Positions 2,288 to 64,000 of a stretch of 64,000 nucleotides of DNA are shown here, one piece after another. Under the pieces are notes generated by a model. That model searched no databases, was not told where the DNA came from, and was given only the letters and a program-made list of their open reading frames with translations. Position numbers and translations under genes: made by a program. How positions within the stretch are numbered: the stretch's first letter is position 1; every line of letters starts with the position of its first letter. The DNA is from Octopus sinensis (taxonomy: Eukaryota). The stretch is from positions 74,648,001 through 74,712,000 of the forward strand of contig NC_042999.1 of NCBI RefSeq assembly GCF_006345805.1, read 5' to 3'.

Positions 2288-2455
2288 TTAGACATGTACA
2301 TATTTCTTAATCCATTCTATTCCGGAATAAACAGCAGAAAATCCTGCTGGATATGACACAGTATATCTGCAGTCTTTCGCAACAAAGCTGGAAACACCTT
2401 GCACCTCCCATTGACCATGGTCATTTTGTGTTTGGAATGGGCCTCCACTGTCACC
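2288..2455 (-). CDS. Last coding exon of LDLa-SRCR serine protease (catalytic Ser)
   Basis: Acceptor ttttttattctttcctag|GGT GAC AGT GGA GGC CCA. Reads GDSGGPFQTQNDHGQWEVQGVSSFVAKDCRYTVSYPAGFSAVYSGIEWIKKYVHV* with stop at 2290-2288. Phase 0 matches the exon at 31567. Confidence 0.95.
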   Translation of the reverse strand, partial: GDSGGPFQTQNDHGQWEVQGVSSFVAKDCRYTVSYPAGFSAVYSGIEWIKKYVHV

Positions 2456-31566: not shown

Positions 31567-31700
31567 AAAACAGATTGGTGAATAAAACTCTTTATTATTG
31601 CCACATATTACAGCCTTCGTGATGGCTGAGAAATACTTTCTGCAGTTTTGATACTCTACAATTTCATTTTTGATTTCTTGTAAAGTATATACACTTTCAT
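31567..31700 (-). CDS. Serine protease exon 3 (Cys168-Cys191 region)
   Basis: ttttcatttaatttctag|AT GAA..TGT TTT|gtaagt. Reads (D)ESVYTLQEIKNEIVEYQNCRKYFSAITKAVICGNNKEFYSPICF; phase 1 to 0. Confidence 0.93.
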
Positions 31701-40084: not shown

Positions 40085-40332
40085 CTTTTTCATTTCGACC
40101 CCAACCAGTCACATAGTAGACTTTATCTATGGAGGCAGGTTTTTCTGGAAGACAAATTGGTTGCACATCATCTGTCAATATAATTCCACTTTCTATATAA
40201 AGAAGTGCCAAATCATAACCTTTTATAAAATGCCCATACTCGTCATGTATTAAGACTTGAGTCACCTTATAAAGTTTTCCTTCACCTCTTTTTATAGATC
40301 CAGTTCTTACTGAATATCCGTAATAGTTGTTT
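40085..40332 (-). CDS. Serine protease exon 2 (catalytic Asp)
   Basis: ctctctttcttttatcag|A AAC..GAA AAA G|gtaaga. Reads NNYYGYSVRTGS..IHDEYGHFIKGYDLALL..VQPICLP..VTGWGRNEK; phase 2 to 1. Confidence 0.95.
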
Positions 40333-40372
40333 CTGATAAAAGAAAGAGAGAAAAACATTGTTATAATAATGC

Positions 40373-40426
<54 letters not shown>

Positions 40427-49548: not shown

Positions 49549-49768
49549 CTCTTTAGCATTCAGATTAATCTGTCAAATGTAGTGTTTATTTATTCACATT
49601 GTTTTGAATTAATCATGCTTTATCTTGTAGCATTGAGATTTCAATGATGTGATTGTTTATTTTTACAATGCCATTATAGGGAAGGTGAGAGAGGCTGGGT
49701 CTGGCCAGTTTGAACATAAAACAGGTAGAATATTTTGACTGGATATGGCCAGTTTAAATGCTAAAGGG
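49549..49768. mobile_element. Short TTAA-type MITE
   Basis: taactctttagcatt and aatgctaaagggttaa are inverted ends. Confidence 0.5.
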
Positions 49769-49878
49769 TTAAATAGATAAATAAGTGTTGATATGGGAAT
49801 AAAGCAGTTTGATCACAATACAAAAATACCCATATTGCTCACATATACATATGAGATTAGTATACTGAAAGTACTTAC

Positions 49879-50047
49879 TCTACACAGTGAGCTGCAGTAA
49901 GCACATAATATCTGCTGATCAATGAGGCAGTGCAAACAAATCTGGTTCCTCTGAGTAACTCCACAACCCATGGCCATTCACCTTGTAAAGCATTATGTCC
50001 ATTCTGAACGATGGGTTCAAACAAATCTCGTTTTCGAGTACCACAAA
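49879..50047 (-). CDS. Serine protease exon 1 (activation region and catalytic His)
   Basis: tgtgtgttttcag|TT TGT..GTA GA|gtaagt. Reads (V)CGTRKRDLFEPIVQNGHNALQGEWPWVVELLRGTRFVCTASLISRYYVLTAAHCV(E); phase 1 to 2. Confidence 0.96.
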
Positions 50048-51679
50048 CTGAAAACACACAAAAATATAATAAAAACAAAGAACAAAATCAAGACAATAAC
50101 TTAAAACCAAAAAATCTTTGATTAGCAATAACATAACAAAGACTATCTAGCAAAACAAAACCGAAAACTAATACTTCCATAAAGAATGGTAGTTTTACTA
50201 ATAGAACACAACATAAAATTTTTTCATAAGCAACTTTTATCAACAACTTTTCTATTTCATGTAGATTGTAAGATTATAAAATATTGGAAAATAGCACGAA
50301 TTGTTGGAGCAATTAGAATGAAGAGTCAAGTTAGATTTTATGTCTTACATCAGGTTCTTAACCTTAAACTGAACTGGTATTTGTTCTCTGATAGATTCAC
50401 AAAAGTAAAGCAGAATAAAGTATTTTTGACAAGAGTGTAGACTAAATCTAAATTACAAATTTTATATGCTTGGTCTAACATCTTATCTATTCAACTGTAA
50501 TAAATCAATCTCTATATTATATAACATACTTTTCAGACTACATTCTACTCCCAACTAAAAACAATCCACTTATTGATTAGCTGTTACTTATCACTGATCC
50601 ACTGTATCTTGTTTCTTCTGAGGTACTGCACTGGTCATTGTTCTGCATCTGCAACTTATTGTCTACACTTAAAGTAACCTTCTTCTATAGCACTTCTCTC
50701 TCTAAACTTCACTGACTCTACGAAATGCTTTGTCATAAGCCTTTCTTCTCAGAATTATAATATATTTAGGACCTTTATATTTCCCTACATTTTCTACCCC
50801 AACCACAAAACTTTCTAAAGATCAAGTGTCCATGCATGTTTTTGCATTCTATATGGATAGATGAATTGGATATAAAATGACAAATCTATGCTTCCTAACA
50901 AGTTAAATAGATATTTCAAAACTAAACATTTCCATTTTCAAGGAAAAGATCAATTTCTTGAAAGATTGTCAGAACAACAAATAAAGTAGGAAAAATGACT
51001 TAAATTGCATCTTGTGAAATATCTAAAATATAAGCACTTGAAGTCTCATGCTTTAGCAAAATCCTTTATTTTTGCTTGTATGTTGGAAGATTATTTAGGA
51101 CAATGCTTGAAAATCACAAAACAAGAAATTAATAAAATCCTCTCTTGAATGATATAATTTGCGGTTGCATTTTGTAATTGTCATCAAGGAAAATATATGA
51201 CGTGATAAGCTTAAGCATGCAAATTTTGTTTTGTGAGTTGTTTAGTCAACAGAAACTACCAACAAAGCACAGTTATTGGTTTTAATAAAAATTAAATAGT
51301 AAAATGATTAAAGTTTTGGCACTACAAAATATAAAGAAATTTTTGATATTTTAAATAAATAACTGCATCAGAAAATAGGAATTATCACTGGCAGTTATGT
51401 ATAGGTGAGTAGTAATGCAGCTCTCTACATGATAGGCTATAATGAAAGGGCTTACAGCACTTTTATAGAAGTAAAACAACACAGATTACAGAAATGTACT
51501 TGCATAGCAAGCATTTTGATCTGAGTTCATGTTCTAAAACTAAAGGGGTTGCAGTGTGGAAGACATATGTTAACCATTCAGAAATGCACAAAGACTGTCA
51601 ACTTCACTTAAACATGTCAACTATGATTAAGTGAAGCTGAGAGTCACTCTGTGTTTCCAATACCCAAATGTTATTACAA

Positions 51680-51945
51680 TTTATTGACTCATAGGTTGGA
51701 TATTAACTATCTTGACTTTGCTAAAGCCTTCAATTCTGTGCCAAACAAACAACTCATGGCAAAACTCTTTGCAATGGGTATGTAAGATGATCTTTATAAC
51801 GGGTTGAAGTCCTTCATTCTCAGTTCAAAAAAAGTAATCACAGTTCTTGGGCATCATTCTTTACCCTATGAGATGACATCTGGAGTACCACAAGGATCTA
51901 GTCTTGGACCCCTGTATTTTTAGTTGCATATATTAATGTCTTAGA
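51680..51945 (+). mobile_element. Old CR1/L2-type RT, left part
   Basis: YLDFAKAF..TSGVPQGSSLGPL. Confidence 0.7.
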
Positions 51946-51949
51946 AATA

Positions 51950-54595
51950 ACATGGTAGTGGAACAATGTTGTTGACAGGGCTACTAGAGAAAAGAAACAG
52001 GCTTGGAAGGACTGGAAGAACGATGGTAGCAGGGAATTGTATCAGACTGCCAGAAGGGAAGCTAGGAGGCAGGTTTATTTAGTCAGAGGGGAAGCAGATA
52101 AGAAAAAATTTGCCAATGTTCTGTGCCATGCGGACCAAAGACTTGAGGTATTTCATGTTGCAAGACAGTGTGAAAGAGAGAATCGTGATGTTGTAGGAGA
52201 GAAATGTGTTCACATGGATGATGGCTCACTTGCACTAAACAAGCCTGCAAAGACAGAGGTTTGGAGATGCCACTATGAAAGGTTGCTGAATAAAGAAAAT
52301 GAATGGGAGAATGAGAGTTTGCCGAATGTCGACCAAACAGAGGGACCAGCTATCCGAGTTGACAGTACTTTGGTAGATAAAGCAATTAAGAGTATGAAGA
52401 CAGGGAAAGCCCCCAGCCCATCAGGAATCACTGCAGAAATGCTCAAAATATCTGGCAATGTAAGCTATAACCCAATCGCCCGTATAGTTAACCAGCTGAT
52501 ACAAAAAGGAGTCATACCCAATGACTGGTGTAGCAGCACTATAGTCAACTGCTACAAAGGTAAAGGTGACACTTTAGATACAAATAACTACAGAGGTATC
52601 AAGTTGTTGGATCAGGTAATGAAGATCACGGAGAGGGTCATAGCCCAACTAATTAGGGAGAGAGTTAGTTTAGATGAGATGCAGTTTGGGTTTGTGCCAA
52701 GGAAATGCACCACTGATGCTATATTCCTGGTAAGACAGCTGCAAGAGAAATACCTAGCCAAAGATAAACCTCTGTACCTGGCTTTTGTTGACATGGAGAA
52801 AGCTTTTGACAGGGTCCCCCGATCCCTTATCTAGTGGTCAATGAGGAAACTAGGGATAGATGAATGGTTAGTGAGGGCTGTGCAAGCCATGTACAGGGAC
52901 GCTGTCAGTAAGGTGAGGATCGGCAACGAGTACAGTGAAGAATTCCAGGTAGAGGTAGGGGTCAACCAAGGTTCAGTTCTTAGACTATTTATCATATCCT
53001 CCAGGCAATAATAGAGAAATTCAAGACAGGATGCCCCTGGGAGCTCCTCTATACTGACGACCTTGCTCTAATTGCTGAGTCACTATCAGAACTCAAGTAG
53101 AAGTTTCAGGTGTGGAAATAAGGATTAGCATTGAAGGGCCTTAGAGTTGACCTAGCTAAAACCAAAGTCCTAATAAGTAGGAAGGCAGGCAAACCACAAA
53201 TCCCTTCAGGTAGATGGCCCTGCTCGATCTGTTGAAAAGGCGTAGGTAGAAACTCTATAAGATGTACCCAGTGTAAGCTATGGACACATAAGAGGTGCAG
53301 CAATATCAAAGGAAAGCTAATTGGGAAGATAGTTTTTGTATGTGGCAGATGCTCAGGAGCAATAAACACTGAAAGTGTGCAGAGAACAACCTCCGCCATA
53401 TTTCTGGGAGAAAAACTAGAAGTTGTTGATAGCTTCTGTTACCTAGGTGACCAAGTCAGTAGTGGAGGAGAGTGAGCTTAAAGTGTAGCTGCTAGAATAA
53501 GAAAAGCCTGAGCAAAGTTCAGAGAGATCTTACCTCTGCTGGTGACAAAGGGCCTCTCGCTCAGAGTAAAAGGCAGACTGTATGACACATGTGTACAAAC
53601 AGCCATGCTACATAGCAGTGAAACATGGGCTGTGACTGCTGAGGATATACGTAAGCTCACAAGGAATGAAGCCAGTATGATGTGATGGATGTGTAATGTC
53701 AGTGTGCATACTTGACAGAATGTAAGTACCTTGAGAGAAGAGTTGAACCTAAGAAGCATCAGATGTGGTGTGCAAGAGAGACGACTGTGACAGTATGGTC
53801 ATGTGGCGAGAATGGATGAGGATAGCTGTGTGAAAAAGTGCCACACCCTAGCAGTTGAGGGAACCTGTGGAAGAGGTAGACTCAGGAAGACCTGGGATGA
53901 AGTGGTGAAGCATGACCTTCGAACATTAGGCTTCACCGAGGCAATGACTAGTGACCGAGACTTTTGGAAATATGCTGTGCTTGAGAAGACCCAGCAAGCC
54001 AAATGTGACCATAATCTCGTGGCCTATGCCCGGGGTGTCACAAGCTCACTTATGCGTACCTTTCCTTCATTGGACACTAAACTCTGCTTGCGAAGACCTG
54101 TTGAGGCAAGTGAAACTGAAATCTAAATCAAATTCGATGACTGGCATCTATGCTAGTGGAGCGCTAAGAGCACCATCCAAGCATGATCGTTGCCAGAGCA
54201 GCTAACTGGCTTCTGTGCTGGTGGCACGTAAAAAGCACCATTTGAGCATGAACTTTACCAGCGTCGCTTTACTGGAACTTGTGCTGGTGGCATGTGAAAA
54301 AATATTTGAGCGAGGTCATTGCCAGTGCCACTGGACTGGCTCCTGTACAGGTGGCATGTAAAAAACACCATTTGAGTGTGGCTGTTGCCAGTACCACCTG
54401 ACTGGCCCTCTTGCCGGTGGCATGTAAAAGCACCCACTACACTCTCGGAGTGGTTGGCATTAGGAAGGGCATCCAGCTGTAGAAACTCTGCCAGATCAAG
54501 ATTGGAGCCTGGTAAAGCCATCTGGTTTGCCAGTCCTCAGTCAAATCATCCAACCCATGCTAGCATGGAAAGTGAACGTTAAACAATGCTGATGC
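51950..54595 (+). mobile_element. RTE-clade LINE, 5'-truncated and decayed, with its 3'UTR
   Basis: ORF 52037-52834 (NYRGIKLL, QFGF, AFVDMEKAFDRVPR), then LLYTDD, a Cys-rich insert WPCSIC..CTQCKLWTHKRC, repeated ctgg..gtggcacgtaaaaagcacc units, and the tail catgctagcatggaaagtgaacgttaaac. Confidence 0.9.
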
Positions 54596-55070
54596 CAACT
54601 TGAAGAATATTACAGTGTTGAAATAAGCAGATGACATCAAAGTGTACCTTGAGATAAAAAAGAACAGATCTTGTATGCTAGAGATCTTTCCAGCAATCAG
54701 ATCTGGACACAATGTAGCAATGGATTACTGATTGGCAACTCGAGCTGGCTGTGGACAAGTGAACCACCATGCATTCTGTGAGGGAAAACCCAAGCTTTAC
54801 ATTCTCCCTCAACAACACCAATCCTAAGAAGTCTGCTAGTGAATGTGACTTGGACATCATTGTCAACAATGATTTGCATTGGACAAACTACATTTCTAAA
54901 ACTGTCAAGAAAGCTGCATGTGTCTTAGCATCACTCAGTAAGACCTTTGTTGGACACTCTCCTGCTATCTATTTAAAGCTGTATATGTCGATGAAATGTT
55001 TGCATGTAGAGTTTGCATCACAGGTGTGGAACCTCTATCTTGCCCAGCATATCAAAATCCTGTTACTAGA
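54596..55070 (+). mobile_element. Old CR1/L2-type RT, right part
   Basis: ADDIKVY..ECDLDIIVNNDLHW..VEFASQVWN continues the element broken at 51945. Confidence 0.65.
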
Positions 55071-55532
55071 TGAATACCTGTTGCCAGGTATCTACAATAC
55101 TCTGAACATTTTGCTTCCTTGGGCACGGACACATAAAAGTTCCAACATCTGGTAACTTGGTAGACACCTACAAGATTATTTATCAGCTTTGCAACAACAA
55201 CCTTGGGTACATTTTTGCATACCATATGTCTAATACTTGAGGACATACTTACAAAAATAAGAAAACACAACACTCATGACTTTTATTAACATTTTTTTCA
55301 TGTTCAAAATTGCTGGCTTGCCAGCTCCTGTCAAACTGCCCAACCCATGCCAGCATGGAAAACGGATGTCAAATTATGATGATAATAATGATGTTGATGA
55401 TGATGATGATAATGATGATGATGATGATGATGATGGTAATGACTCACAAGATTTTGATCAGCTTGGAGCTGTTGTAGAAGACACCTGCCTAAGGTACCAT
55501 GCTGTGGGAAGTATTATATATAGGTTACTTAC

Positions 55533-55570
55533 CTTCTTTACTGCATTCCAATACCATGTATTTGCACTTC
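55533..55570 (-). CDS. 38-nt exon, end of SRCR domain
   Basis: cttttactcttctctgtag|G AAG TGC..GAA G|gtaagt. Reads (E)KCKYMVLECSKE; phase 2 to 1 joins both neighbours. Confidence 0.85.
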
Positions 55571-56703
55571 CTACAGAGAAGAGTAAAAGTTTTATTATTA
55601 TATTTTTCAATGTTAAAATCACTTCTTTATACTGTTACCAAATCATATTGTAAGAGAGTAACAGCTAGATAAGTTATAGAACTGCACTGTGTTTATTGTC
55701 AAGGCATTTTTTGTAAATGATGTCGATCATCTAAGTTAAATCATTTAATACATAGTAGAACTGTTCATCATTGTAATCAGTGGGTGTGTTGTAAAACTGA
55801 TGAGCATCACATTAGCCTGAAAGTATTTATTTGGATTTTACCTGTGGTAACAATGTTAATAACTTAATGATGCTTTCAATTCTATCACAGTCACTTCAAA
55901 ATTAACATGAATGAAAATATCAATTGGTTCACGTCATCTAATTTCAAATAGGCATTGAGCAGACAAATAAGATAATAGACTATCTTCTCATAGATTGTAA
56001 ATTCAAATCTGCTGAAGTGAGAATAGATCAAATTAGGAATAGATAATTGGAAAAGCTGTCTGTGATAAACAGACCTTCTATCTAGGGTGGATTTTTCATG
56101 TTTTACGTCATGAAGCTGAGAGATAAACACCCACTCACAAAATACATTTGTTTTGGAGGAGATATTTTACATTATGTGTAAGCACAACTAACTGTTGCAA
56201 GTAGTAGAGGCAATATATAATCAATGAGTGCTTTCTTTAACCAGTGGAAAAGAGTTTGAAGCCATCTATACAACTCATCCATGATAAAAGTATCTATCAT
56301 GTTTTCATCTCTGCATTAACCAATTCTTTCACTTTTTCCAAATATGGGTATCATTATTTGATGTGACAAAGAGATCAATGATTTGGAAAAATTAATAGGA
56401 CAATGGCAAATTACTTTGTGATAATTACTAATGTCCTTTTTCAACCTGCATTAAAATCTTGGATCACTCATCTGGGATCAACAAAAGATCACTGGAATCA
56501 ATAAAGTCAAATTTAATCCATCACCAAAAAATAAATTCTCTGTTGAGTAAAGCATAAACTTTCAGTGAGCCAAGGTGACAAACTAGGACTCCATTTCTAG
56601 TTGTTGCTATTCCACTTGGTTACTGTAACAGGAAAAAATGCAGCATGGCATATAACATACTGTAACATGGCATAAATGTTGAATAACAGAAATAAATATT
56701 TAC

Positions 56704-56811
56704 TCGAAGGAATTTGCTTTGAATCCTGGAATCAGTCCCATATTGCTGTCTGAAGGGTTTTGTGTGAATTTTACACCAAATCCCTCAATTGAATTACCAA
56801 ATGTTCCATTA
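56704..56811 (-). CDS. SRCR middle exon
   Basis: cattcttattttctcatag|T AAT..TTC GA|gtaaat. Reads (S)NGTFGNSIEGFGVKFTQNPSDSNMGLIPGFKANSF; open only as phase 2 to 2. Confidence 0.75.
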
Positions 56812-57366
56812 CTATGAGAAAATAAGAATGAATGTAGAAAAATCAATAGAGACATAAATAGAGAAAGAAAGAGTCACAGATAGAAAAGAATATAGATCAA
56901 TTGATACAGAAAGATAAAGAGATAAAAGAAACAAAGAGGGCAACACAGATAGATTGAAGCAAAAATATAAAAAGTTAACATATTGGAAAGATATAAGATA
57001 TATTTAGATAATCAATTTTGATATTGTATACTTTCGCAAGTGAAATGACTTAGTTTATACATTCAGGAAAATTATGCAAATCCTGCACCTCAAAAGCATA
57101 GCGGTATATTCTCTAAGTTGATATTCACTACAAAACATTTTGTTTTATTTTTGGACAAGACATTTTATCTTCGTCCTCCTCCTTGGAATCATACTTGGAA
57201 TCTTGGAGTTAGTAGCCCACGCTCTTAACCACTATGCCATATGACTCAACATAATATTATTATGGTGCATTATCAATCATATGGCAGTCTTTTTGATTAT
57301 ATAAAATGATATACTGTCACCTTCAAAGAAGTGGACAATGAAAAATGTGTTATTCAGTTTTCCTAC

Positions 57367-57484
57367 CTTCTTCCAACAGAGGAACACAAATGATTTGCAA
57401 TTTTTTCACTGTTCAAGTTGTCTTCACAAATATTTTCATATGAACCATTGTGGGACACTAGAATTGTGTTGTTTATGTATGTAA
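57367..57484 (-). CDS. SRCR first exon
   Basis: tttgtttgttttttctag|TT ACA..AGA AG|gtagga. Reads (F)TYINNTILVSHNGSYENICEDNLNSEKIANHLCSSVGR, with the TTSP-type SRCR C..A..lC..lG pattern. Confidence 0.85.
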
Positions 57485-58877
57485 CTAGAAAAAACAAACA
57501 AACAAAAGAACAATACAAGACAAAGCAAAAAGTTAATTTTAATTTTATTAATCTATAACCAATATCAGCTTATGCACATACGATTACACTCAACACCAAT
57601 GTTTGCCACTACTCTACTTATGTGTGTGCTGGCATGTGTATGTGTGTATGTATGTGTATAAAACTGCAAACATGTGTATGTATAAATAGGATATAGCCTT
57701 TCATCTATGCACACTTTGCTGAACATATCAATGCAAAATTGTTAGCAATTTTAATGTTAAGATATTTGTATTCTCTAACTGCACACTTGGTTTACATAGG
57801 AATATTGTAATGACCTAAGCAGCAGAGGAAGTGCATATTCTGGAAACATAGTAATCAGAGTAAAAGTCCCAAGTGCTATCATTTCTGCTGGTAAAAAAAG
57901 GAACAAGTAAAAGAAATAACTGATGTTAAGCATAAAGAAGTAAAACCAAATATAAAGTTTCATCATATATATATGAACATGTATCCTTCACTTGTCATAA
58001 AACTATTCAAACAAGATGACACTTGAATTCATCTCAACATTTTTGCAGAGTAGTACACTGAAGAGAGATGTTCCTTAATGTACTTCATAATGTGAGTCAA
58101 AAATTGAAGGGATGGAAAATGAGGAGATGCATCTACATGTTGAGCAATGCACCTTACTTATTGTACTGCTGGTCACTGCACTAAAGTAAGAGGACCAGTG
58201 AGTATATGACTACATTTTATTTTTCAGACATGATTAAAATAGGAACTTGATTGGTATTCTGGCAAGGCATGTGAATGATTTTGTATTCTGAGGAAATGAA
58301 TTGTTTGAGAAAGGTGTAATTATAGTTTTGGAAAAGTAATTTAAAGTAGGAATTGTGTATTCAAGAATTGAAGATTGAATATATATCAATCTAAGATCCC
58401 TCCTAATTCTCTTCTCAAGATAATGTTAGTGTCATAATCAAGAAATTTTTATGAGGTAGAAGACCATGCCATTTATATATGTAAAGGGTAAAGATCCCCT
58501 TTGGTCATGAATGGCCATGGGATTACATCTAGAAAATTATCCTCCAATGTACAAGTTCAGGCAAGGTAGTTTATAGAAGACCACCAGTTGCCCATTCATT
58601 AAAGTCTTCCCTCTCTACGCCACCGATGTTATTCAAGGGAAAGGCAAAAGATGATACATCTTGGCACCAGTTATGTTACAACTCATTTCTACAGCTGAGT
58701 GAACTGGAGTAATGAGAAATAAAGTGTCTTGCTCAAGATCACAACACAACATGGTCTAAGAATTGAACTCACTACTTAATGATTGTGAGCCTGATTCTCT
58801 AACCACACACACATGCCCAAACCACACACACACACATGCAGTTTACACATACATTTACATACACACAGGCACACATA

Positions 58878-58909
<32 letters not shown>

Positions 58910-59226
58910 CAAATCATCATCATCATCATTGTTTAACATCCGCCTTCCATGCTAGCATGGGTGGGACCGTTTCATGAGCTGGCCAGGCAGAAGCCAGCAC
59001 CTGACCTCTGTGACTGTTTTGGCAGGATTTTTACAGCTGGATGCCCTTCCTAACACCAATCACTCAGCAGAGTGGATTTAGTGCTTTTTACGTGGCACAA
59101 GGACAGGTGAGGTGAGTAGTGCATTTTACGTGGCACAAGCATACATATATACTTTACAAATACACGGACACACATACACAGATGTATACTTATATTTATA
59201 TAGAGTGAGTAAATTTTTCTACGTAC

Positions 59227-59337
59227 AGCAATAGAATTCATCAGAGTCATCATCACAGTCTTTTTTACCATCACAGCGAAGTTCTTGTTTGATGCATTTC
59301 AGATTTTTGCATTGCCAATTTCCAATTGCACATGAAG
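59227..59337 (-). CDS. LDL-receptor class A repeat exon
   Basis: tttctactttcag|CT TCA TGT..TGC T|gtacgt. Reads SCAIGNWQCKNLKCIKQELRCDGKKDCDDDSDEFYC; six Cys, phase 1-1. Confidence 0.93.
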
Positions 59338-60376
59338 CTGAAAGTAGAAAATTGGGAAAAAGAAATCATCCATGGAATCTTTTGTAATCTGGAAAGCTAT
59401 CTTTTTTGCTGCTATTGTTTAGCTCAGGGTCAGTCTTTATCTTGTAGACCTATGACCATTCTAAGTTATACATCCTGTCTGTTTTCAGATATAGTGCATT
59501 TAGAAGTACATTGTTCAATGCATTCTTCCCTTTTTCAGGTTTTTTCTAGCAATTTCTGTAACTATGCAGAAGCTTTCTCATCTGCTCCACTGTGGATATA
59601 CTAAATATCCCTGTCATGTACTAAGGAAGAAATAATTGACTATACTTGCCAACTAAATTTGTAGCCTGCTATGTGAGAAATGCTTTTTGTTTTTTTTAAT
59701 CAATCCAGTTAAAACCTGAACTGATTCATTTTCTTGTTGAAGCTATTCTGTTTCTATTGATTCACTCCTTACTATGTTCCCCATTTAGTGATTAGAAAGA
59801 TGGCTGAATTACTTCTTAATAAAAGCATTTTATGTTTCCCATATAATAGTTAATAATCTTGCTGATTTAGTTCCATGTTGAAGCTATTTTGTTTCCTATG
59901 AAACAGTTGGAAGCCCTAAAGAAAACGTTTTGTTTTTTATGTCCCTGATGGAAACTGAAGGGTTTAAATTCTCAGCGTTGTTAATTTGGTTTTCATGTAA
60001 GCATTGACAACCAAACCCATTCAGATACCACTTACTGTTAATAGTTGGCAAACCAGTCGTTTCAATTTTTATCTGAAACCTTTTTATTCTCAAGATGTTG
60101 TTGATATCCTAGTTATCTCTATTTCCATTTCAAAGTATTTTCTTTCCCATTCAGTTATTGTGAGCAATCCAGCTGCTTCCACTCCCATGTAAAGCTTTTT
60201 TAAATACCATGCAGGACTTGTAAACTTAACTATTTCAGTTCCAATTCAAAGCTACTTTGTTTTGCTATGTAAGACTTGACAACCCAGCTGTTTCAATTTC
60301 AAGATTTACAATAGGCAACACAACACTTTCAGTTTTTATTCAAAACAGTTTATATTCCCAAGAAACAGTTGGTAAA

Positions 60377-61590
60377 TGTTGTGGAGGATACTCCTTGAGT
60401 GAGAGAAGTGGGCTGTTCCACTACAAATAAATAGTGGACAGCTACAAAGAGTGTAGTCAGTCACAGAGCTATTTTTGGTGTTTTTTTAAAATCATTTTTG
60501 ATCCCTGTGAGTGAAATTGTGAGTTAAATTGCTATATACTCATTGAAGGTCTCCTGTAAGGGTGAAACTATCTTTTGAATATCATTGTTAAACTGTTGAA
60601 TTGTTGTTGCTATTTTTGTCTGTGAAATTACAATTGTTTTCTTCCCCATTCACGGGTGAAGTAGACAAGACACAGAGGATAGAGTGGGAACCAGTTCCTG
60701 CTGGCAGTTATGCTCCAGCCACTGGAAGACGTTTGACAGCTGACGTGTTACAGGTATGAGAGATAAAGATGGAGCAGAGGAATGACCACAGGATACAAGG
60801 AAAAATTCGCTGACAAAAATAATTCTATGAAATAACAGAATATGATGGCAAAAAAATTCTGTTGAACAAAGGAGTACTACCCGGGACACAGAGAAAAAGA
60901 ATAATACAAGTCTGTTGAAAGATTTCAGTCAGGTTACTCATGTTTTCATAGCACTACTCGTAAGATTGTAAAGCATACATTCAAACAGCATGGTTTGAAA
61001 GTGGAATACACAGAGTTAAAAAAAACAGAATTGCCAATAAGTGTATATCGGAAAACTCTATGTAATAATTTATTTATGTGTGAAATAGAAATAATAGAAT
61101 ATGATGGGAAAAAAAAAATCTATTGAAGAAGGATTTCTGAAGTACTACCTGGGACACAGAGTTAACATAATGTAAGTCTATTTGAAGGATTTCTGTCAGG
61201 TAACTATGTGTTTGTAGCACTACTGGTAAGAATGTAGAGCCGGTACTACCTGGGACATTCTGGAGAGAGAACTCTATGTAATAATTAATTTTCCTGTGAT
61301 AATAAATTGAAAAAAAATTTTTTTTTCAATTTATTATCACAGAAACTGAAAATGAAAAAAAAATTTTTTTTGTCCTGCACAGAAACTGAAAATGAAAAAA
61401 AATTCTGTGTAAAAAAAAATGAAAAATAATAATTCTGTGTGTAAAAAAAATGGAAAATGAAAAAAAAATAATGCTGTGTGTAGAAAAAAAATCTCAAAAG
61501 GGGAGGTGTTGTGGAGGACACCTCTGAGTGAGAGAATAAATAGTGGACAGCTATGAGGAGTGGAGACAGTCGATGAGGTATGCCATTCGG
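60377..61590 (+). mobile_element. Degenerate small LTR-element remnant
   Basis: tgttgtggagga(t/c)ac..tgagtgagagaa..aataaatagtggacagcta occurs at 60377 and 61507; the second follows a purine tract aaaaggggagg. Internal diverged duplications lie at 60830-61260. Confidence 0.4.
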
Positions 61591-62034
61591 GCCAGTCATG
61601 CAGATGATGAAGTACATCGTTATAATGCAGGACATATCAGTGTCGAGCAAGACATAACAGAAAACTAGTTGCTTTTCTCCTCAGTTGAAATTATTTTGTG
61701 TTTTCTATAATAGTTGGCAATAGATCTGTTTCAAATCCTAGTTGAATTAATTGTTTCAAATTATTATTAAAATAATATTGTTTTTTATGTGCAAGAGTGG
61801 TTGTGTGGTAAGAAGTTTGCTTGTCAACCACATGGTCCTCGATTCAGTCTCACTGCATGGTACCCTGGACAAATGTCTACTTACTACTATAGCCCTGGGC
61901 TGACCAAAGGCTTGTGAATGGACTTGGTAGGCATAAGCTGAAAGAAGCCAATTGTATGTATATGTCATTAACATCACCATCCTCATCATTTAACACCCAT
62001 TTCCCATGCTGGCTTGGGTTGGACGGTTTGAGAG

Positions 62035-62114
62035 GAGCTGGCCAGTAAAGGAGCTGGCCAGTAAAGGAGCTGGCCAGTAAAGGAGCTGGCCAGTAAAGGA
62101 GCTGGCCAGTAAAG
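62035..62114. repeat. Five perfect 16-bp tandem repeats inside an RTE tail remnant
   Basis: (gagctggccagtaaag)x5. Confidence 0.9.
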
Positions 62115-62499
62115 AAGCTGTCCAGACTCCAATTGGCTGTTGTGACATGGTTTCTACAGCTGGGTACCTTTCCAACTTCCAGCCACTTTACAGAGTGTGC
62201 TGGGTGCTTTTTATGTGTCATTGGCATGGGTGCATTTACACAGCAGCATGAGTACATTTTATGTGACACTGGCATCTGTAAAGGACAAGTCTGTATATAT
62301 GGGTGGATGTCAACGATTTTACTTAGCTTCATGCATCTTCTCAAGCTGGCAACTTAGCTTTTTTTTTTTAAATACTAGTTGAAGCTGTGGTTTACTCATG
62401 CACAAGGAATGTACATGTCTCTACATGTTACATTGTAAATTGCAGCTTTCCACTAGTATTCATTTGTCTTTTGCAGCCGCTGAAGTGGACTAAAGCATT

Positions 62500-62790
62500 A
62501 TAAGAGGGGCAGTTGAATGCAGATCAGTTATCAGGTTCTTGTATCTGAAAGGTTGCACTCCAAAAGAAACTTTCGATGAGATGAAAGAAGTTTATGGTGG
62601 TGATGCACCATCATGTGACATAAGTCAAGCACTAGCATTGCCAGTTCAAATGTGGTTGGACATAGGTAGAAACTGCTTCTATTCTTAGACAGCCCTATTC
62701 CACCAATGATGGCAACACCATCCATAAAGTGGAAGCCACAATTTTGTGGATCAGTACATAACTATTTGGCAACTAGCTCAAAAAGTGAGC
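62500..62790 (+). mobile_element. Mariner transposase N-terminal remnant
   Basis: VECRSVIRFLYLKGCTPKETFDEMKEVYGGDAPS resembles the mariner HTH start. Confidence 0.6.
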
Positions 62791-63293
62791 TAGTTGAAGA
62801 TTTTTTTTGTTTCTCATGCAACAGTTTGTGACCCTTTTGTTCAACTGAAGCAATTGTGTTTCCTATGCAACATTTTATTTTCCTATTTCATCTCTTCTTT
62901 GTGAATATTTGAAAATTTACACATTTCTTAAATTTTGGAGCTTCTCAAGTTTCCATTTTCAAGTCAGCATTAAAACTACTTATGAGGGTTGATAGAATTC
63001 ATTTTTTGTATTGACATAAAACTGGTTGGAATGAAAAGGTAAAATTTAGATGGATTTTGTTATGCTGTTTACTACAGTGAAGATTTAATTATTTGATGAG
63101 GTCATTTTGTTTTAAAATGTTTTTGTTTGTAAATTGGATTACTGATTGAAGTGTTGTTCTCTACATTTCATGAAATAAACTACTTATGGATTCTTTGATA
63201 TGCCTGAGCAACCACATCTGGTCTAGATGGTAAACTTACTAAAACAAAATCACCTGATACTCTAATAAAAAGCAAGATATCTATCTTTCTTAC

Positions 63294-63425
63294 CGCAATT
63301 CTTTTCATCAGTGCCACCTTCACAGTCAATTTCTCCATTACACATACTTTCTTTACGAATGCATACATTTGTAGAATTGGTTTCATTGCGACCGGGAGGA
63401 CATCTAACTTCACCATTTTCACAAC
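63294..63425 (-). CDS. LDL-receptor class A repeat exon (gene continues beyond the window)
   Basis: ttttacatcttcaag|GT TGT..TGC G|gtaaga. Reads CENGEVRCPPGRNETNSTNVCIRKESMCNGEIDCEGGTDEKNC; six Cys, phase 1-1. Confidence 0.93.
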
Positions 63426-64000
63426 CTTGAAGATGTAAAAAAGAAAAAGGTGAATATATAAATTATAAATATTCTATAAATAAGTAAATAGTTAGCACAG
63501 TTAAGTATGTTTAATTTTCATGTAATCTTTTCCTGTTGGAATAATTAGTTAATGAATCATTTGCCTGACAACCAAACAATTATAATTTTATAATTTAAAT
63601 AGGTTTGCTTCATCGGAAATGATGCAGCTGTGGTCACATGCCCTTTCACTAAGATGTAAGCATAGATCTCTAGTTAGGCAGCTGGTGACATAGTATCATC
63701 CCAGGCTGTAAGGGCTAAAAAAAGGATTAAAGTGGTAGGTGGTAGGGATTGAAATCAAGAGGCTATGTGGGAAGCAAAACATAGATATATTTGCTTGATC
63801 CAGTGGATGATGTAACTGATAGATTTAAGCTCCAATACATTTATTGTATAAACCTGTAATGTAAGAAGTTCAGACAGAATTTTAAACTTGAGACTAAAAC
63901 AAAAGTGCATTCCAGAAGGTTTGAAACTTTTCCAGGAGAGACATTTATTAATTTCAAAGAAGGACAATACTCTAATATTCTTTAAAATAAGATCCTTTTA

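What the first reader, a model, noticed from the sequence alone, without database searches (positions are those of the whole stretch)
49960..50047. Non-canonical zymogen switch (EPI/VQNG) matching the enzyme's own predicted specificity, plus an upstream RKR
Seen: CGTRKRDLFEPIVQNGHNALQGEWPW has no Arg/Lys before an IVGG-like start. Counting back from WPW aligns E-P-I|V-Q-N-G with enteropeptidase T-P-K|I-V-G-G, giving P1=Ile and new N-terminus Val16. A tribasic RKR lies 6-8 residues before that bond. Inference: cleavage after Ile would suit an elastase-like pocket, so the pocket and activation site may have co-evolved into a trypsin-independent self-activating unit, possibly primed by a convertase cut at RKR.
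Basis: inference. Interest (0 to 1): 0.72.

Follow-up and report, generated by a model that had tools for sequence, protein, structure and literature searches.

The report
Octopus mosaic protease, non-basic activation site
The stretch is the activation-site exon of an octopus multi-domain serine protease whose whole mollusc family lacks the usual Arg/Lys cut site, but the Ile seen here is a one-base change from the family's usual Asn and is not matched to the enzyme's pocket.

Summary
The peptide is real. It lies on the minus strand, in one exon (50047-49879) of a nine-exon gene encoding LDLa-LDLa-SRCR-S1 protease; the gene's 5' end lies outside the window. Four independent alignments put Ile at position 15 (P1) and Val-Gln-Asn-Gly at 16-19. 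His57, Asp102, Ser195 and Asp194 are intact.

The co-evolution reading fails. The syntenic Octopus bimaculoides ortholog has the same pocket (Pro189, Ile190, Phe192, Val216, Ala226) but Asn at P1 (AAC against ATC). I found relatives in O. bimaculoides, O. sinensis, O. vulgaris, Argonauta hians and an oyster. In all of them P1 is Asn, Ser or Met, never Arg/Lys, and all have Pro189. Val216 occurs only in the window gene and its ortholog, so it predates the Asn-to-Ile change. The third basic residue of RKR occurs only in one sub-clade.

What remains is a family-wide non-tryptic activation bond on an otherwise canonical zymogen switch. Non-basic P1 residues are common in invertebrate S1 proteases, and LDLa-bearing, chymoelastase-like, self-activating proteases (ModSP/HP14) are a known precedent.

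The protease domain evolves fast (dN/dS about 1.1-1.4) with its reading frame kept. The binding modules are constrained (0.30). Who cuts the bond is unknown.

The parts
63294..63425 (-). Exon encoding LDL-receptor class A module 1 (CENGEVRC...DEKNC). It is phase 1 at both ends and has an acceptor site, so the gene continues upstream beyond the window.
   Evidence: Six-frame reading and splice sites; Pfam Ldl_recept_a, 2 stretches; matches P0129 residues 44-87.
59227..59337 (-). Exon encoding LDL-receptor class A module 2 (SCAIGNWQC...DEFYC).
   Evidence: Pfam best stretch 45-80; all six Cys are conserved in O. bimaculoides.
57367..57484 (-). First exon of the divergent SRCR module (TYINNTILVSHNGSYENICEDNL...VGR).
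   Evidence: tblastn with P0129; splice sites. A family profile hits CD163 SRCR domains at E 4.9e-11. Pfam SRCR is found in 3 of 5 family members but not in the window sequence taken alone.
56704..56811 (-). Second exon of the SRCR module (NGTFGNSIEGFGVKFTQ...KANSF).
55533..55570 (-). 38-nt exon that ends the SRCR module (KCKYMVLECSKE). Its internal ATG is the annotated start of the truncated O. bimaculoides model.
   Evidence: The frame is continuous with the exons on both sides.
49879..50047 (-). Protease exon A, which holds the finding: linker Cys (50045-50043), RKR (50036-50028), predicted scissile bond Ile15|Val16 (50012-50010 | 50009-50007) and His57 (49889-49887).
40085..40332 (-). Protease exon B, with Asp102 (40214-40212) and Cys122.
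31567..31700 (-). Protease exon C, with Cys168, Cys182, Pro189 (31578-31576), Ile190, Cys191 and Phe192.
2288..2455 (-). Protease exon D, with Gly193, Asp194, Ser195 (2449-2447), Ser214, Val216 (2383-2381), Cys220, Ala226 and the stop codon.

Best explanation
The finding is the zymogen-activation segment of a rapidly evolving octopus mosaic S1 serine protease with the domain order ...LDLa-LDLa-SRCR-protease. [quoted passage not shown]

The protease keeps the canonical switch: a hydrophobic residue 16, Gly19, Asp194, a linker Cys to tether the pro-region, and the full catalytic triad. It should therefore be turned on by one cut exactly at the 15|16 bond (inferred).

The whole family has replaced the usual Arg/Lys at P1 with an uncharged residue, mostly Asn, and has Pro at pocket position 189. 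The cut must then be made by a non-tryptic protease. The most likely candidate is the enzyme itself or a paralog, acting in trans when molecules are concentrated through their LDLa/SRCR/MAM modules, as in insect ModSP/HP14. An unidentified upstream protease is the alternative (inferred; no cleavage data exist).

The Ile in this window is a lineage-specific single-base replacement of Asn. It is one of many amino-acid changes in a protease domain under diversifying or relaxed selection. It is not a pocket-matched adaptation. The RKR is a clade-specific elaboration of a conserved Arg-Lys in the linker, not a demonstrated convertase site.
For: Gene structure:
- Nine exons, all with AG/GT splice sites, join into one 407-codon open frame.
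- Pfam finds Trypsin at E 1e-44 and two Ldl_recept_a stretches.
- The SRCR module is identified by a family profile.
- The triad, Gly193, Asp194 and 8 Cys are present.
- The ortholog's AlphaFold model has pLDDT 88 and TM about 0.8 to FXIa, enteropeptidase and TMPRSS11D.

Family comparison:
- Orthology to O. bimaculoides P0001 rests on synteny, with about 88-92% non-coding identity.
- The family motif is CG-x-RK-x-x-L-[FV]-E-[PS]-P1|[IV]xxG. P1 is N in six relatives, S in one, M in one and I in the window. Pro189 is present in all.
- The P1 codon is ATC in the window and AAC in both O. bimaculoides loci.

Evolutionary rates:
- Whole protease domain: 67 nonsynonymous against 13 synonymous differences, dN/dS 1.40. 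Exons B-D alone give 1.12.
- There is no indel (P 0.004 from the intron indel rate), no stop (P 0.024), and all Cys and catalytic residues are kept (P 0.023).
- The binding modules have dN/dS 0.30.
- Changes are spread over both lineages, 18 against 23.

Precedent:
- HP14 and its orthologs carry 4-5 LDLa repeats (PMC1761132).
- In one insect genome, 58 of 177 S1 proteins carry a non-basic P1 and 5 more lack a P1 residue (PMC10036332).
- Predicted non-basic P1 (Y, L, F, M) also appears in mosaic proteases of mosquitoes, a nemertean, a brachiopod, an annelid and a scallop.
Against: - Nothing here shows that the bond is cut at all, or by what.
- P1 varies (N, S, I, M). That fits no single known S1 specificity well, so self-cleavage by a conserved pocket is not obviously compatible with every member.
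- dN/dS at or above 1 in the protease domain could mean relaxed constraint.
- One O. bimaculoides paralog, P0276, has already lost His57 and Ser195.
- Expression, the signal peptide and the 5' end of the gene were not seen, because they lie outside the window.
- The Ile rests on one base in one assembly. A polymorphism or a sequencing error cannot be excluded.
Confidence: 0.55

Rival explanations
1. P1 Ile and an elastase-like pocket (Val216) co-evolved into a self-activating, trypsin-independent unit, primed by a proprotein-convertase cut after RKR.
For: - Val216 is elastase-like and rare: 14 of 119 homologs have it.
- Ile is a plausible P1 for a narrowed hydrophobic pocket (my own knowledge).
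- The order of events, Val216 first and then Asn to Ile in the window lineage, is compatible with a site that later adapted to the pocket.
- RKRDLFEP is identical in the window, P0001 and P0129.
Against: - The ortholog with an identical pocket keeps Asn.
- P1 does not co-vary with residues 190 or 216 across the family.
- Residues 189/190/226 are Pro/Ile/Ala, not elastase-like.
- The convertase consensus lacks Arg at P4. The third basic residue is missing in Argonauta, in the O. sinensis and O. vulgaris paralogs, in P0128 and in P0180. The oyster has no basic pair at all.
Confidence: 0.08
2. The bond is no longer used. The protease domain is drifting, locked as a zymogen or acting only as a binding module or a weak single-chain enzyme. 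The Asn-to-Ile change is one neutral or degenerative substitution on the way to a pseudo-protease.
For: - dN/dS is 1.1-1.4 in the protease domain, with differences spread equally over codon positions (28/27/25). The binding modules stand at 0.30.
- A paralog, P0276, has lost the catalytic His and Ser, and its activation segment is degenerate.
- The Cys136-Cys201 disulfide has been lost in this clade.
Against: - Under pure neutrality, the joint chance of no stop, no indel and all 13 key residues kept is about 3e-6.
- The activation segment is conserved at 15 of 16 positions, against a 22% background rate of change.
- The nonsynonymous rate exceeds the intron rate (0.119 against about 0.087, P 0.006). 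That points to positive rather than merely relaxed selection.
Confidence: 0.17
3. Activation in the family is Asn-directed. Either a legumain-type asparaginyl endopeptidase cuts the bond, or the Asn cyclises and cuts its own bond. The window's Ile allele would then escape or abolish that control.
For: Asn is the P1 in six of nine family sequences, across very different pockets. Asn-specific endopeptidases and Asn-cyclisation self-cleavage both exist in other protein families (my own knowledge).
Against: - Ser (Argonauta), Met (oyster) and Ile (window) at the same position are incompatible with a strict need for Asn.
- A literature search found no S1 zymogen known to be activated this way.
- The window lineage shows no extra acceleration of change after losing Asn (18 against 23 changes).
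Confidence: 0.08
4. A convertase cuts after RKR, and exopeptidases then trim DLFEP(I/N) to expose Val16.
For: A K-R pair is present. Six residues, which is three dipeptides, separate it from Val16.
Against: - The Pro in the stretch to be trimmed would block a cathepsin C-type dipeptidyl peptidase (my own knowledge of its rules).
- The site is not conserved across the family.
- Basic clusters right after the linker Cys-Gly also occur in vertebrate membrane serine proteases, such as hepsin, without being cleaved (from memory).
Confidence: 0.04

Closest known systems
Vertebrate mosaic and type II transmembrane serine proteases with an LDLa-SRCR-protease C-terminus (enteropeptidase/TMPRSS15, TMPRSS2-4, matriptase)
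   Same: - The order of modules before the catalytic domain is the same.
- A linker Cys sits about 12 residues before residue 16.
- Both have the chymotrypsin fold. Sequence and fold searches return enteropeptidase, TMPRSS2 and TMPRSS11D at E 1e-26 to 1e-27 and TM 0.8.
- The larger relatives carry MAM domains, as enteropeptidase does.
   Different: - Those enzymes have Arg/Lys at P1 and Asp189. Here P1 is Ile (Asn in relatives) and residue 189 is Pro.
- The N-terminal anchor was not seen in the window.
- Identity is only about 28-33%.
Arthropod modular serine proteases: Drosophila ModSP, Manduca HP14, Tenebrio MSP
   Same: These are LDLa-bearing mosaic S1 proteases with a non-tryptic (chymoelastase-like) pocket. 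They self-activate when concentrated by recognition proteins (PMC10732536, PMC10795361, PMC1761132). They are the functional precedent for a trypsin-independent, self-activating zymogen.
   Different: - They have a Sushi/CCP domain and a Wonton domain rather than SRCR.
- They prefer Leu at P1.
- No close sequence relationship was found.
- Self-activation of the octopus protein is untested.
Pancreatic-type elastases and chymotrypsin C
   Same: They are the best-scoring catalytic-domain homologs, at about 31-36% identity. Val216 is shared with some elastases.
   Different: - They are single-domain digestive zymogens with Arg at P1, activated by trypsin.
- Their pocket has Ser189 and Thr/Ser226, not Pro189 and Ala226.
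[quoted passage not shown]
   Same: They share the SRCR-protease junction, the activation motif, Pro189 and a non-basic P1. This is the family to which the window gene belongs.
   Different: - Those proteins are about 2000 residues long, with up to 7 MAM domains. How far the window gene extends upstream is unknown.
- They have Gly216, keep Cys136-Cys201, and have Asn, Ser or Met at P1.

Membership tests
S1A (chymotrypsin-fold) serine protease, Pfam PF00089 | Profile match above the curated cut-off | tested here: met
   153-155 bits against a cut-off of 20.6, covering profile positions 2-220 of 220.
S1A (chymotrypsin-fold) serine protease, Pfam PF00089 | Catalytic triad His57/Asp102/Ser195 plus Gly193 and Ser214 | tested here: met
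   TAAHC, YDLALL and GDSGGP are present. The columns are checked against chymotrypsinogen numbering.
S1A (chymotrypsin-fold) serine protease, Pfam PF00089 | Two-beta-barrel fold | tested here: met
pLDDT is 88 and TM 0.8-0.83 to FXIa, thrombin and enteropeptidase.
Zymogen with the Ile16-Asp194 activation switch | Hydrophobic residue 16, Gly19, Asp194, and a tethering Cys before the site | tested here: met
   Val16, Gly19, Asp194 and Cys at 50045-50043. [IV]xxG is conserved across the family.
Zymogen with the Ile16-Asp194 activation switch | Arg/Lys at P1 (tryptic activation) | tested here: not met
   Ile in the window; Asn, Ser or Met in relatives.
Zymogen with the Ile16-Asp194 activation switch | Actual cleavage at the 15|16 bond, giving activity | not testable with these tools
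   This needs protein chemistry.
LDLa-SRCR-protease mosaic (enteropeptidase/TMPRSS type) | LDL-receptor class A module(s) upstream of the protease | tested here: met
   Two Pfam Ldl_recept_a stretches, at E 5.6e-11.
LDLa-SRCR-protease mosaic (enteropeptidase/TMPRSS type) | SRCR domain directly before the protease | tested here: met
   A family profile of the 90-residue module hits CD163 SRCR domains at E 4.9e-11. Pfam SRCR is found in 3 of 5 members, best E 7.9e-6. The window sequence alone is below detection.
LDLa-SRCR-protease mosaic (enteropeptidase/TMPRSS type) | N-terminal signal anchor or transmembrane segment | not testable with these tools
   The 5' end of the gene lies beyond window position 64000. 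The O. bimaculoides flank is full of N gaps.
Pancreatic/neutrophil-type elastase specificity pocket | Ser189 with bulky residues at 216 and 226 (Val216/Thr226) | tested here: not met
   Val216 is present, but residue 189 is Pro, 190 is Ile and 226 is Ala. No homolog among the 119 has Pro189 or Ile190.
ModSP/HP14-type self-activating modular protease | LDLa repeats plus a Sushi/CCP domain and a Wonton domain | tested here: not met
   The LDLa repeats are present. No Sushi or Wonton domain is found in the part seen; an SRCR sits there instead.
ModSP/HP14-type self-activating modular protease | Self-activation on clustering, with a non-tryptic P1 | not testable with these tools
   Only the non-tryptic P1 and the non-tryptic pocket can be read from sequence.
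Proprotein-convertase (furin/kexin) processing site | R-X-[K/R]-R consensus, conserved among relatives | tested here: not met
   The sequence is T-R-K-R, with Thr at P4. Relatives have RKL, RKI or RKA, and the oyster has none.

The most novel reading that the evidence does not exclude
The family-wide pairing of Pro189 with an uncharged, mostly Asn, P1 marks a so far undescribed activation logic for S1 zymogens in molluscs. It could be an Asn-directed cut, by a legumain-type enzyme, by Asn cyclisation, or by a pocket selective for Asn. In that case the Ile in this octopus would be a natural rewiring or loss of the switch, inside a protease domain under diversifying selection.
Probability: 0.1. 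Interest if true: 0.65.

Novelty: new variant of a known kind. Interest (0 to 1): 0.33.

Why it matters
If the bond is used, this mollusc family would be a second, independent example, after arthropod ModSP/HP14, of large recognition-module proteases that sit at the top of a cascade and start without a trypsin-like activator. That would give a handle on extracellular protease cascades in cephalopods (immunity, mucus, saliva), which are essentially unstudied.

The contrast between fast-changing catalytic domains and constrained binding modules also makes the tandem octopus paralogs a compact case for studying how protease specificity diversifies.

For the scan itself the lesson is more modest. 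A non-basic P1 is ordinary in invertebrate S1 proteases, and a single sequence cannot support a co-evolution claim.

Tried and rejected
1. I first thought the 38-nt exon (55570-55533) could not be spliced in frame after LDLa2, because that junction gives TGA, and that LDLa2 joined exon A directly. I rejected this once P0129 revealed two SRCR exons in between. All nine exons then read in one frame.

2. My first join of exons B and C read through the donor site (KGDES). The correct reading is NEK-D-ESV.

3. A word-index protein search with the 61-residue exon peptide found no candidates. The exhaustive HMMER search with the same peptide found the family.

The output carries no coordinates, so it says nothing about whether the N-terminus inserts.

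5. I looked for further upstream exons in the 4.4 kb of O. bimaculoides flank and in window 63426-64000. Nothing was recognisable, and there are many N gaps.

6. Literature searches for a described S1 zymogen with Asn at P1, or one activated by legumain, turned up nothing relevant. A search for the octopus MAM/LDLa proteases found only mentions in skin-mucus proteomes.

7. I considered a pseudogene and rejected it as the main reading, because the frame, the Cys framework and the catalytic residues are kept against expectation.

Full report
**What is at the coordinates**

The reported peptide is encoded on the minus strand. Translating window 50060-49860 (-) gives CVFS|VCGTRKRDLFEPIVQNGHNALQGEWPWVVELLRGTRFVCTASLISRYYVLTAAHCVE. 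My first two translations of the stated coordinates, plus strand and minus strand in another frame, give something else. The peptide sits in an exon bounded by a ttttcag acceptor and a gtaagt donor, 50047-49879. The window is AT-rich eukaryotic DNA with long introns.

**The gene**

They carry Asp102, the Cys168-Cys182 region and GDSGGP.
- Guided by a paralog found later (P0129), I placed five upstream exons: two LDLa modules, two SRCR exons and a 38-nt exon.
- All nine exons have AG/GT boundaries and join into one 407-codon frame that ends in a stop.
- The first exon has an acceptor site, so the gene starts beyond position 64000.
- Pfam finds Trypsin (E 1e-44) and two Ldl_recept_a stretches.
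- The 90-residue module before the protease is a divergent SRCR. A five-sequence family profile hits CD163 SRCR domains at E 4.9e-11, and Pfam SRCR matches 3 of 5 members.
- The part of the gene in the window therefore encodes LDLa-LDLa-SRCR-protease, the same module order as the C-terminus of enteropeptidase and the TMPRSS enzymes.

**Checking the numbering**

Four independent alignments agree that Ile is residue 15 (P1) and that Val-Gln-Asn-Gly are residues 16-19:

- tblastn with chymotrypsinogen;
- MAFFT with 119 homologs;
- the Pfam HMM, whose position 2 falls on Gln;
- phmmer against PDB chains that begin at IVGG.

In the 119 nearest homologs P1 is R 106, K 7, L 1, M 1 and a gap in 4.

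His57, Asp102, Ser195, Gly193, Asp194 and Ser214 are present. So are four disulfide pairs, counting the linker Cys and Cys122. The pocket is Pro189, Ile190, Phe192, Val216, Ala226. None of the 119 homologs has Pro189 or Ile190; 14 have Val216 and 7 have Ala226. The pocket is non-tryptic, but it is not a textbook elastase pocket.

**Relatives**

The only close hit in the 5.8-billion-protein index was O. bimaculoides 'serine protease 48' (P0001, 78% identity).

- Its locus (L001) is collinear with the window at about 88-92% non-coding identity, so it is the ortholog.
- Its annotation is truncated because upstream exons fall in assembly gaps.
- Its pocket is identical, but its site reads EPN|VQNG (AAC against ATC).

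An exhaustive HMMER search with the exon peptide, with cluster names, found the wider family:

- a tandem paralog about 300 kb away in O. bimaculoides (P0129, 449 aa, LDLa-LDLa-SRCR-protease);
- two unnamed fragments, P0128 and P0180;
- from a further search, a Crassostrea virginica homolog and an O. bimaculoides paralog that has lost His57 and Ser195.

Aligned together, the family shows the following.

- The motif is CG-x-RK-x-x-L-[FV]-E-[PS]-P1|[IV]xxG.
- P1 is Asn in six relatives, Ser in Argonauta, Met in the oyster and Ile only in the window.
- Pro189 is present in every member.
- Residue 216 is Gly everywhere except in the window and its ortholog.
- The third basic residue of RKR is confined to the window/P0001/P0129 clade.

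The core claim was that the pocket and the scissile bond co-evolved so that Ile fits an elastase-like pocket. It is not supported, for three reasons.

- The same pocket goes with Asn in the ortholog.
- Asn is kept across pockets that differ at residues 190 and 216.
- Val216 predates the Asn-to-Ile change, which is one transversion in one lineage.

A weak version, in which the site later adapts to the pocket, cannot be excluded, but it rests on a single event. Convertase priming is also weak, since P4 is Thr and the site is not conserved.

The general point survives. No member of this family can be activated by a trypsin-like enzyme at the canonical bond, while the rest of the switch is conserved.

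**Evolutionary rates**

Against the ortholog, the protease coding sequence has 80 differences in 717 nt.

- They are spread evenly over codon positions (28/27/25).
- 67 are nonsynonymous and 13 synonymous; dN is 0.129, dS 0.092 and dN/dS 1.40.
- Exons B-D alone give 1.12. Exon A has 15 nonsynonymous changes against 1 synonymous.
- Non-coding DNA differs by about 8.3% and has 0.0078 gap openings per base.
- Under neutrality the coding sequence should have collected about 5.6 indels (P of none 0.004) and a stop codon (P of none 0.024), and should have lost some of 13 key residues (P of keeping all 0.023). None of this happened.
- The nonsynonymous rate exceeds the intron rate (P 0.006).
- The LDLa and SRCR exons have dN/dS 0.30 against the paralogous locus L002.
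- Polarised with other family members, the changes fall on both lineages, 18 against 23. The Asn-to-Ile change is therefore not followed by lineage-specific decay.

I read this as a working gene whose catalytic domain is diversifying on a fixed scaffold. Relaxed constraint is the main rival reading.

**Mechanism**

- Shown: the domain set, the intact catalytic and switch residues, the non-basic P1 and its variability, and Pro189.
- Inferred: one cut at the 15|16 bond frees Val16 to pair with Asp194, and the cut is made by a non-tryptic protease. This is most simply the enzyme or a paralog in trans, when molecules are clustered through the recognition modules.
[quoted passage not shown] HP14-type enzymes carry 4-5 LDLa repeats (PMC1761132).
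- Weakness: N, S, I and M at P1 do not fit one obvious specificity, and nothing shows that cleavage happens.

**How unusual it is**

- In Ostrinia furnacalis, 114 of 177 S1 proteins have Arg/Lys at P1. Of the rest, 16 have chymotrypsin-type, 21 elastase-type and 21 other residues, and 5 lack a P1 residue (PMC10036332).
- Among the best matches to the exon peptide, a pattern scan predicts non-basic P1 in mosaic proteases of mosquitoes (Leu), a nemertean (Tyr), a brachiopod (Met/Phe), an annelid (Phe) and a scallop (Tyr).
- A non-canonical P1 is therefore ordinary for invertebrates.
- What I did not find described is the combination of Pro189 with a mostly Asn P1 in a mollusc MAM/LDLa/SRCR protease family.
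- Octopod serine proteases are known for lineage-specific expansion and expression in the salivary glands (PMC7656900). [quoted passage not shown] Neither paper can be tied to this gene.

**Verdict**

The feature is a new variant of a known kind: a mosaic S1 zymogen with a non-tryptic activation bond. Interest is modest.

Noticed in passing
window 52037-52834 (+): A 265-residue ORF with reverse-transcriptase-like motifs (…LAFVDMEKAFDRVP…) lies in the intron between the 38-nt exon and exon A. The same stretch aligns to O. bimaculoides L001 14285-15000 at 89%, so the insertion predates the split of the two species.
   Followed up: no
window 2456-31566 (intron between protease exons C and D): This intron is about 29 kb here but about 4.1 kb in O. 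bimaculoides (L001 39636-43764). Only scattered blocks align, so there are large lineage-specific insertions, or deletions or gaps on the other side.
   Followed up: no
L001 (O. bimaculoides CM046603.1:146910856-146964787): The public model XP_052822578 ('serine protease 48', 248 aa, no signal peptide) starts at an internal ATG of the 38-nt SRCR exon. The LDLa1 exon, the end of the first SRCR exon and all of the second SRCR exon fall in runs of N, so the model is a truncated annotation rather than a short protein.
   Followed up: partly
window 49586-64000 against L001 and L002: The 5' half of the window gene (LDLa, SRCR, exon A) is about 89-93% identical to both O. bimaculoides paralogous loci. 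The 3' half (exons B-D) is 88-92% identical to L001 but only 73-80% to L002. This suggests a partial duplication, or gene conversion of the 5' half, within the tandem cluster.
   Followed up: partly
P0276 (O. bimaculoides, 592 aa): A family member with the same MAM/LDLa/SRCR front end has lost His57 (TPAAYL) and Ser195 (SFDEGS), and its activation segment is degenerate. It is a non-catalytic protease homolog within the same family.
   Followed up: no
window exons B and D (residues 136 and 201): The Cys136-Cys201 disulfide, present in the Argonauta, O. sinensis and oyster relatives, is absent in the window gene, its ortholog and P0129 (Tyr136; Gln or Thr around 201).
   Followed up: no
window about 40372-40420 and about 55350-55450 (minus strand): A long (TTA)n microsatellite runs to within about 40 bases upstream of the exon B acceptor. 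A (CAT)n run, reading as poly-His in one frame, lies just downstream of the 38-nt exon.
   Followed up: no
hits P0126, P0187, P0192, P0196, P0226, P0234, P0247: A pattern scan of the best matches to the exon peptide predicts Tyr, Leu, Phe or Met at the canonical activation position in mosaic proteases of a nemertean, a brachiopod, an annelid, mosquitoes and a scallop. The taxonomic spread of non-tryptic zymogen sites looks wide and uncatalogued.
   Followed up: partly
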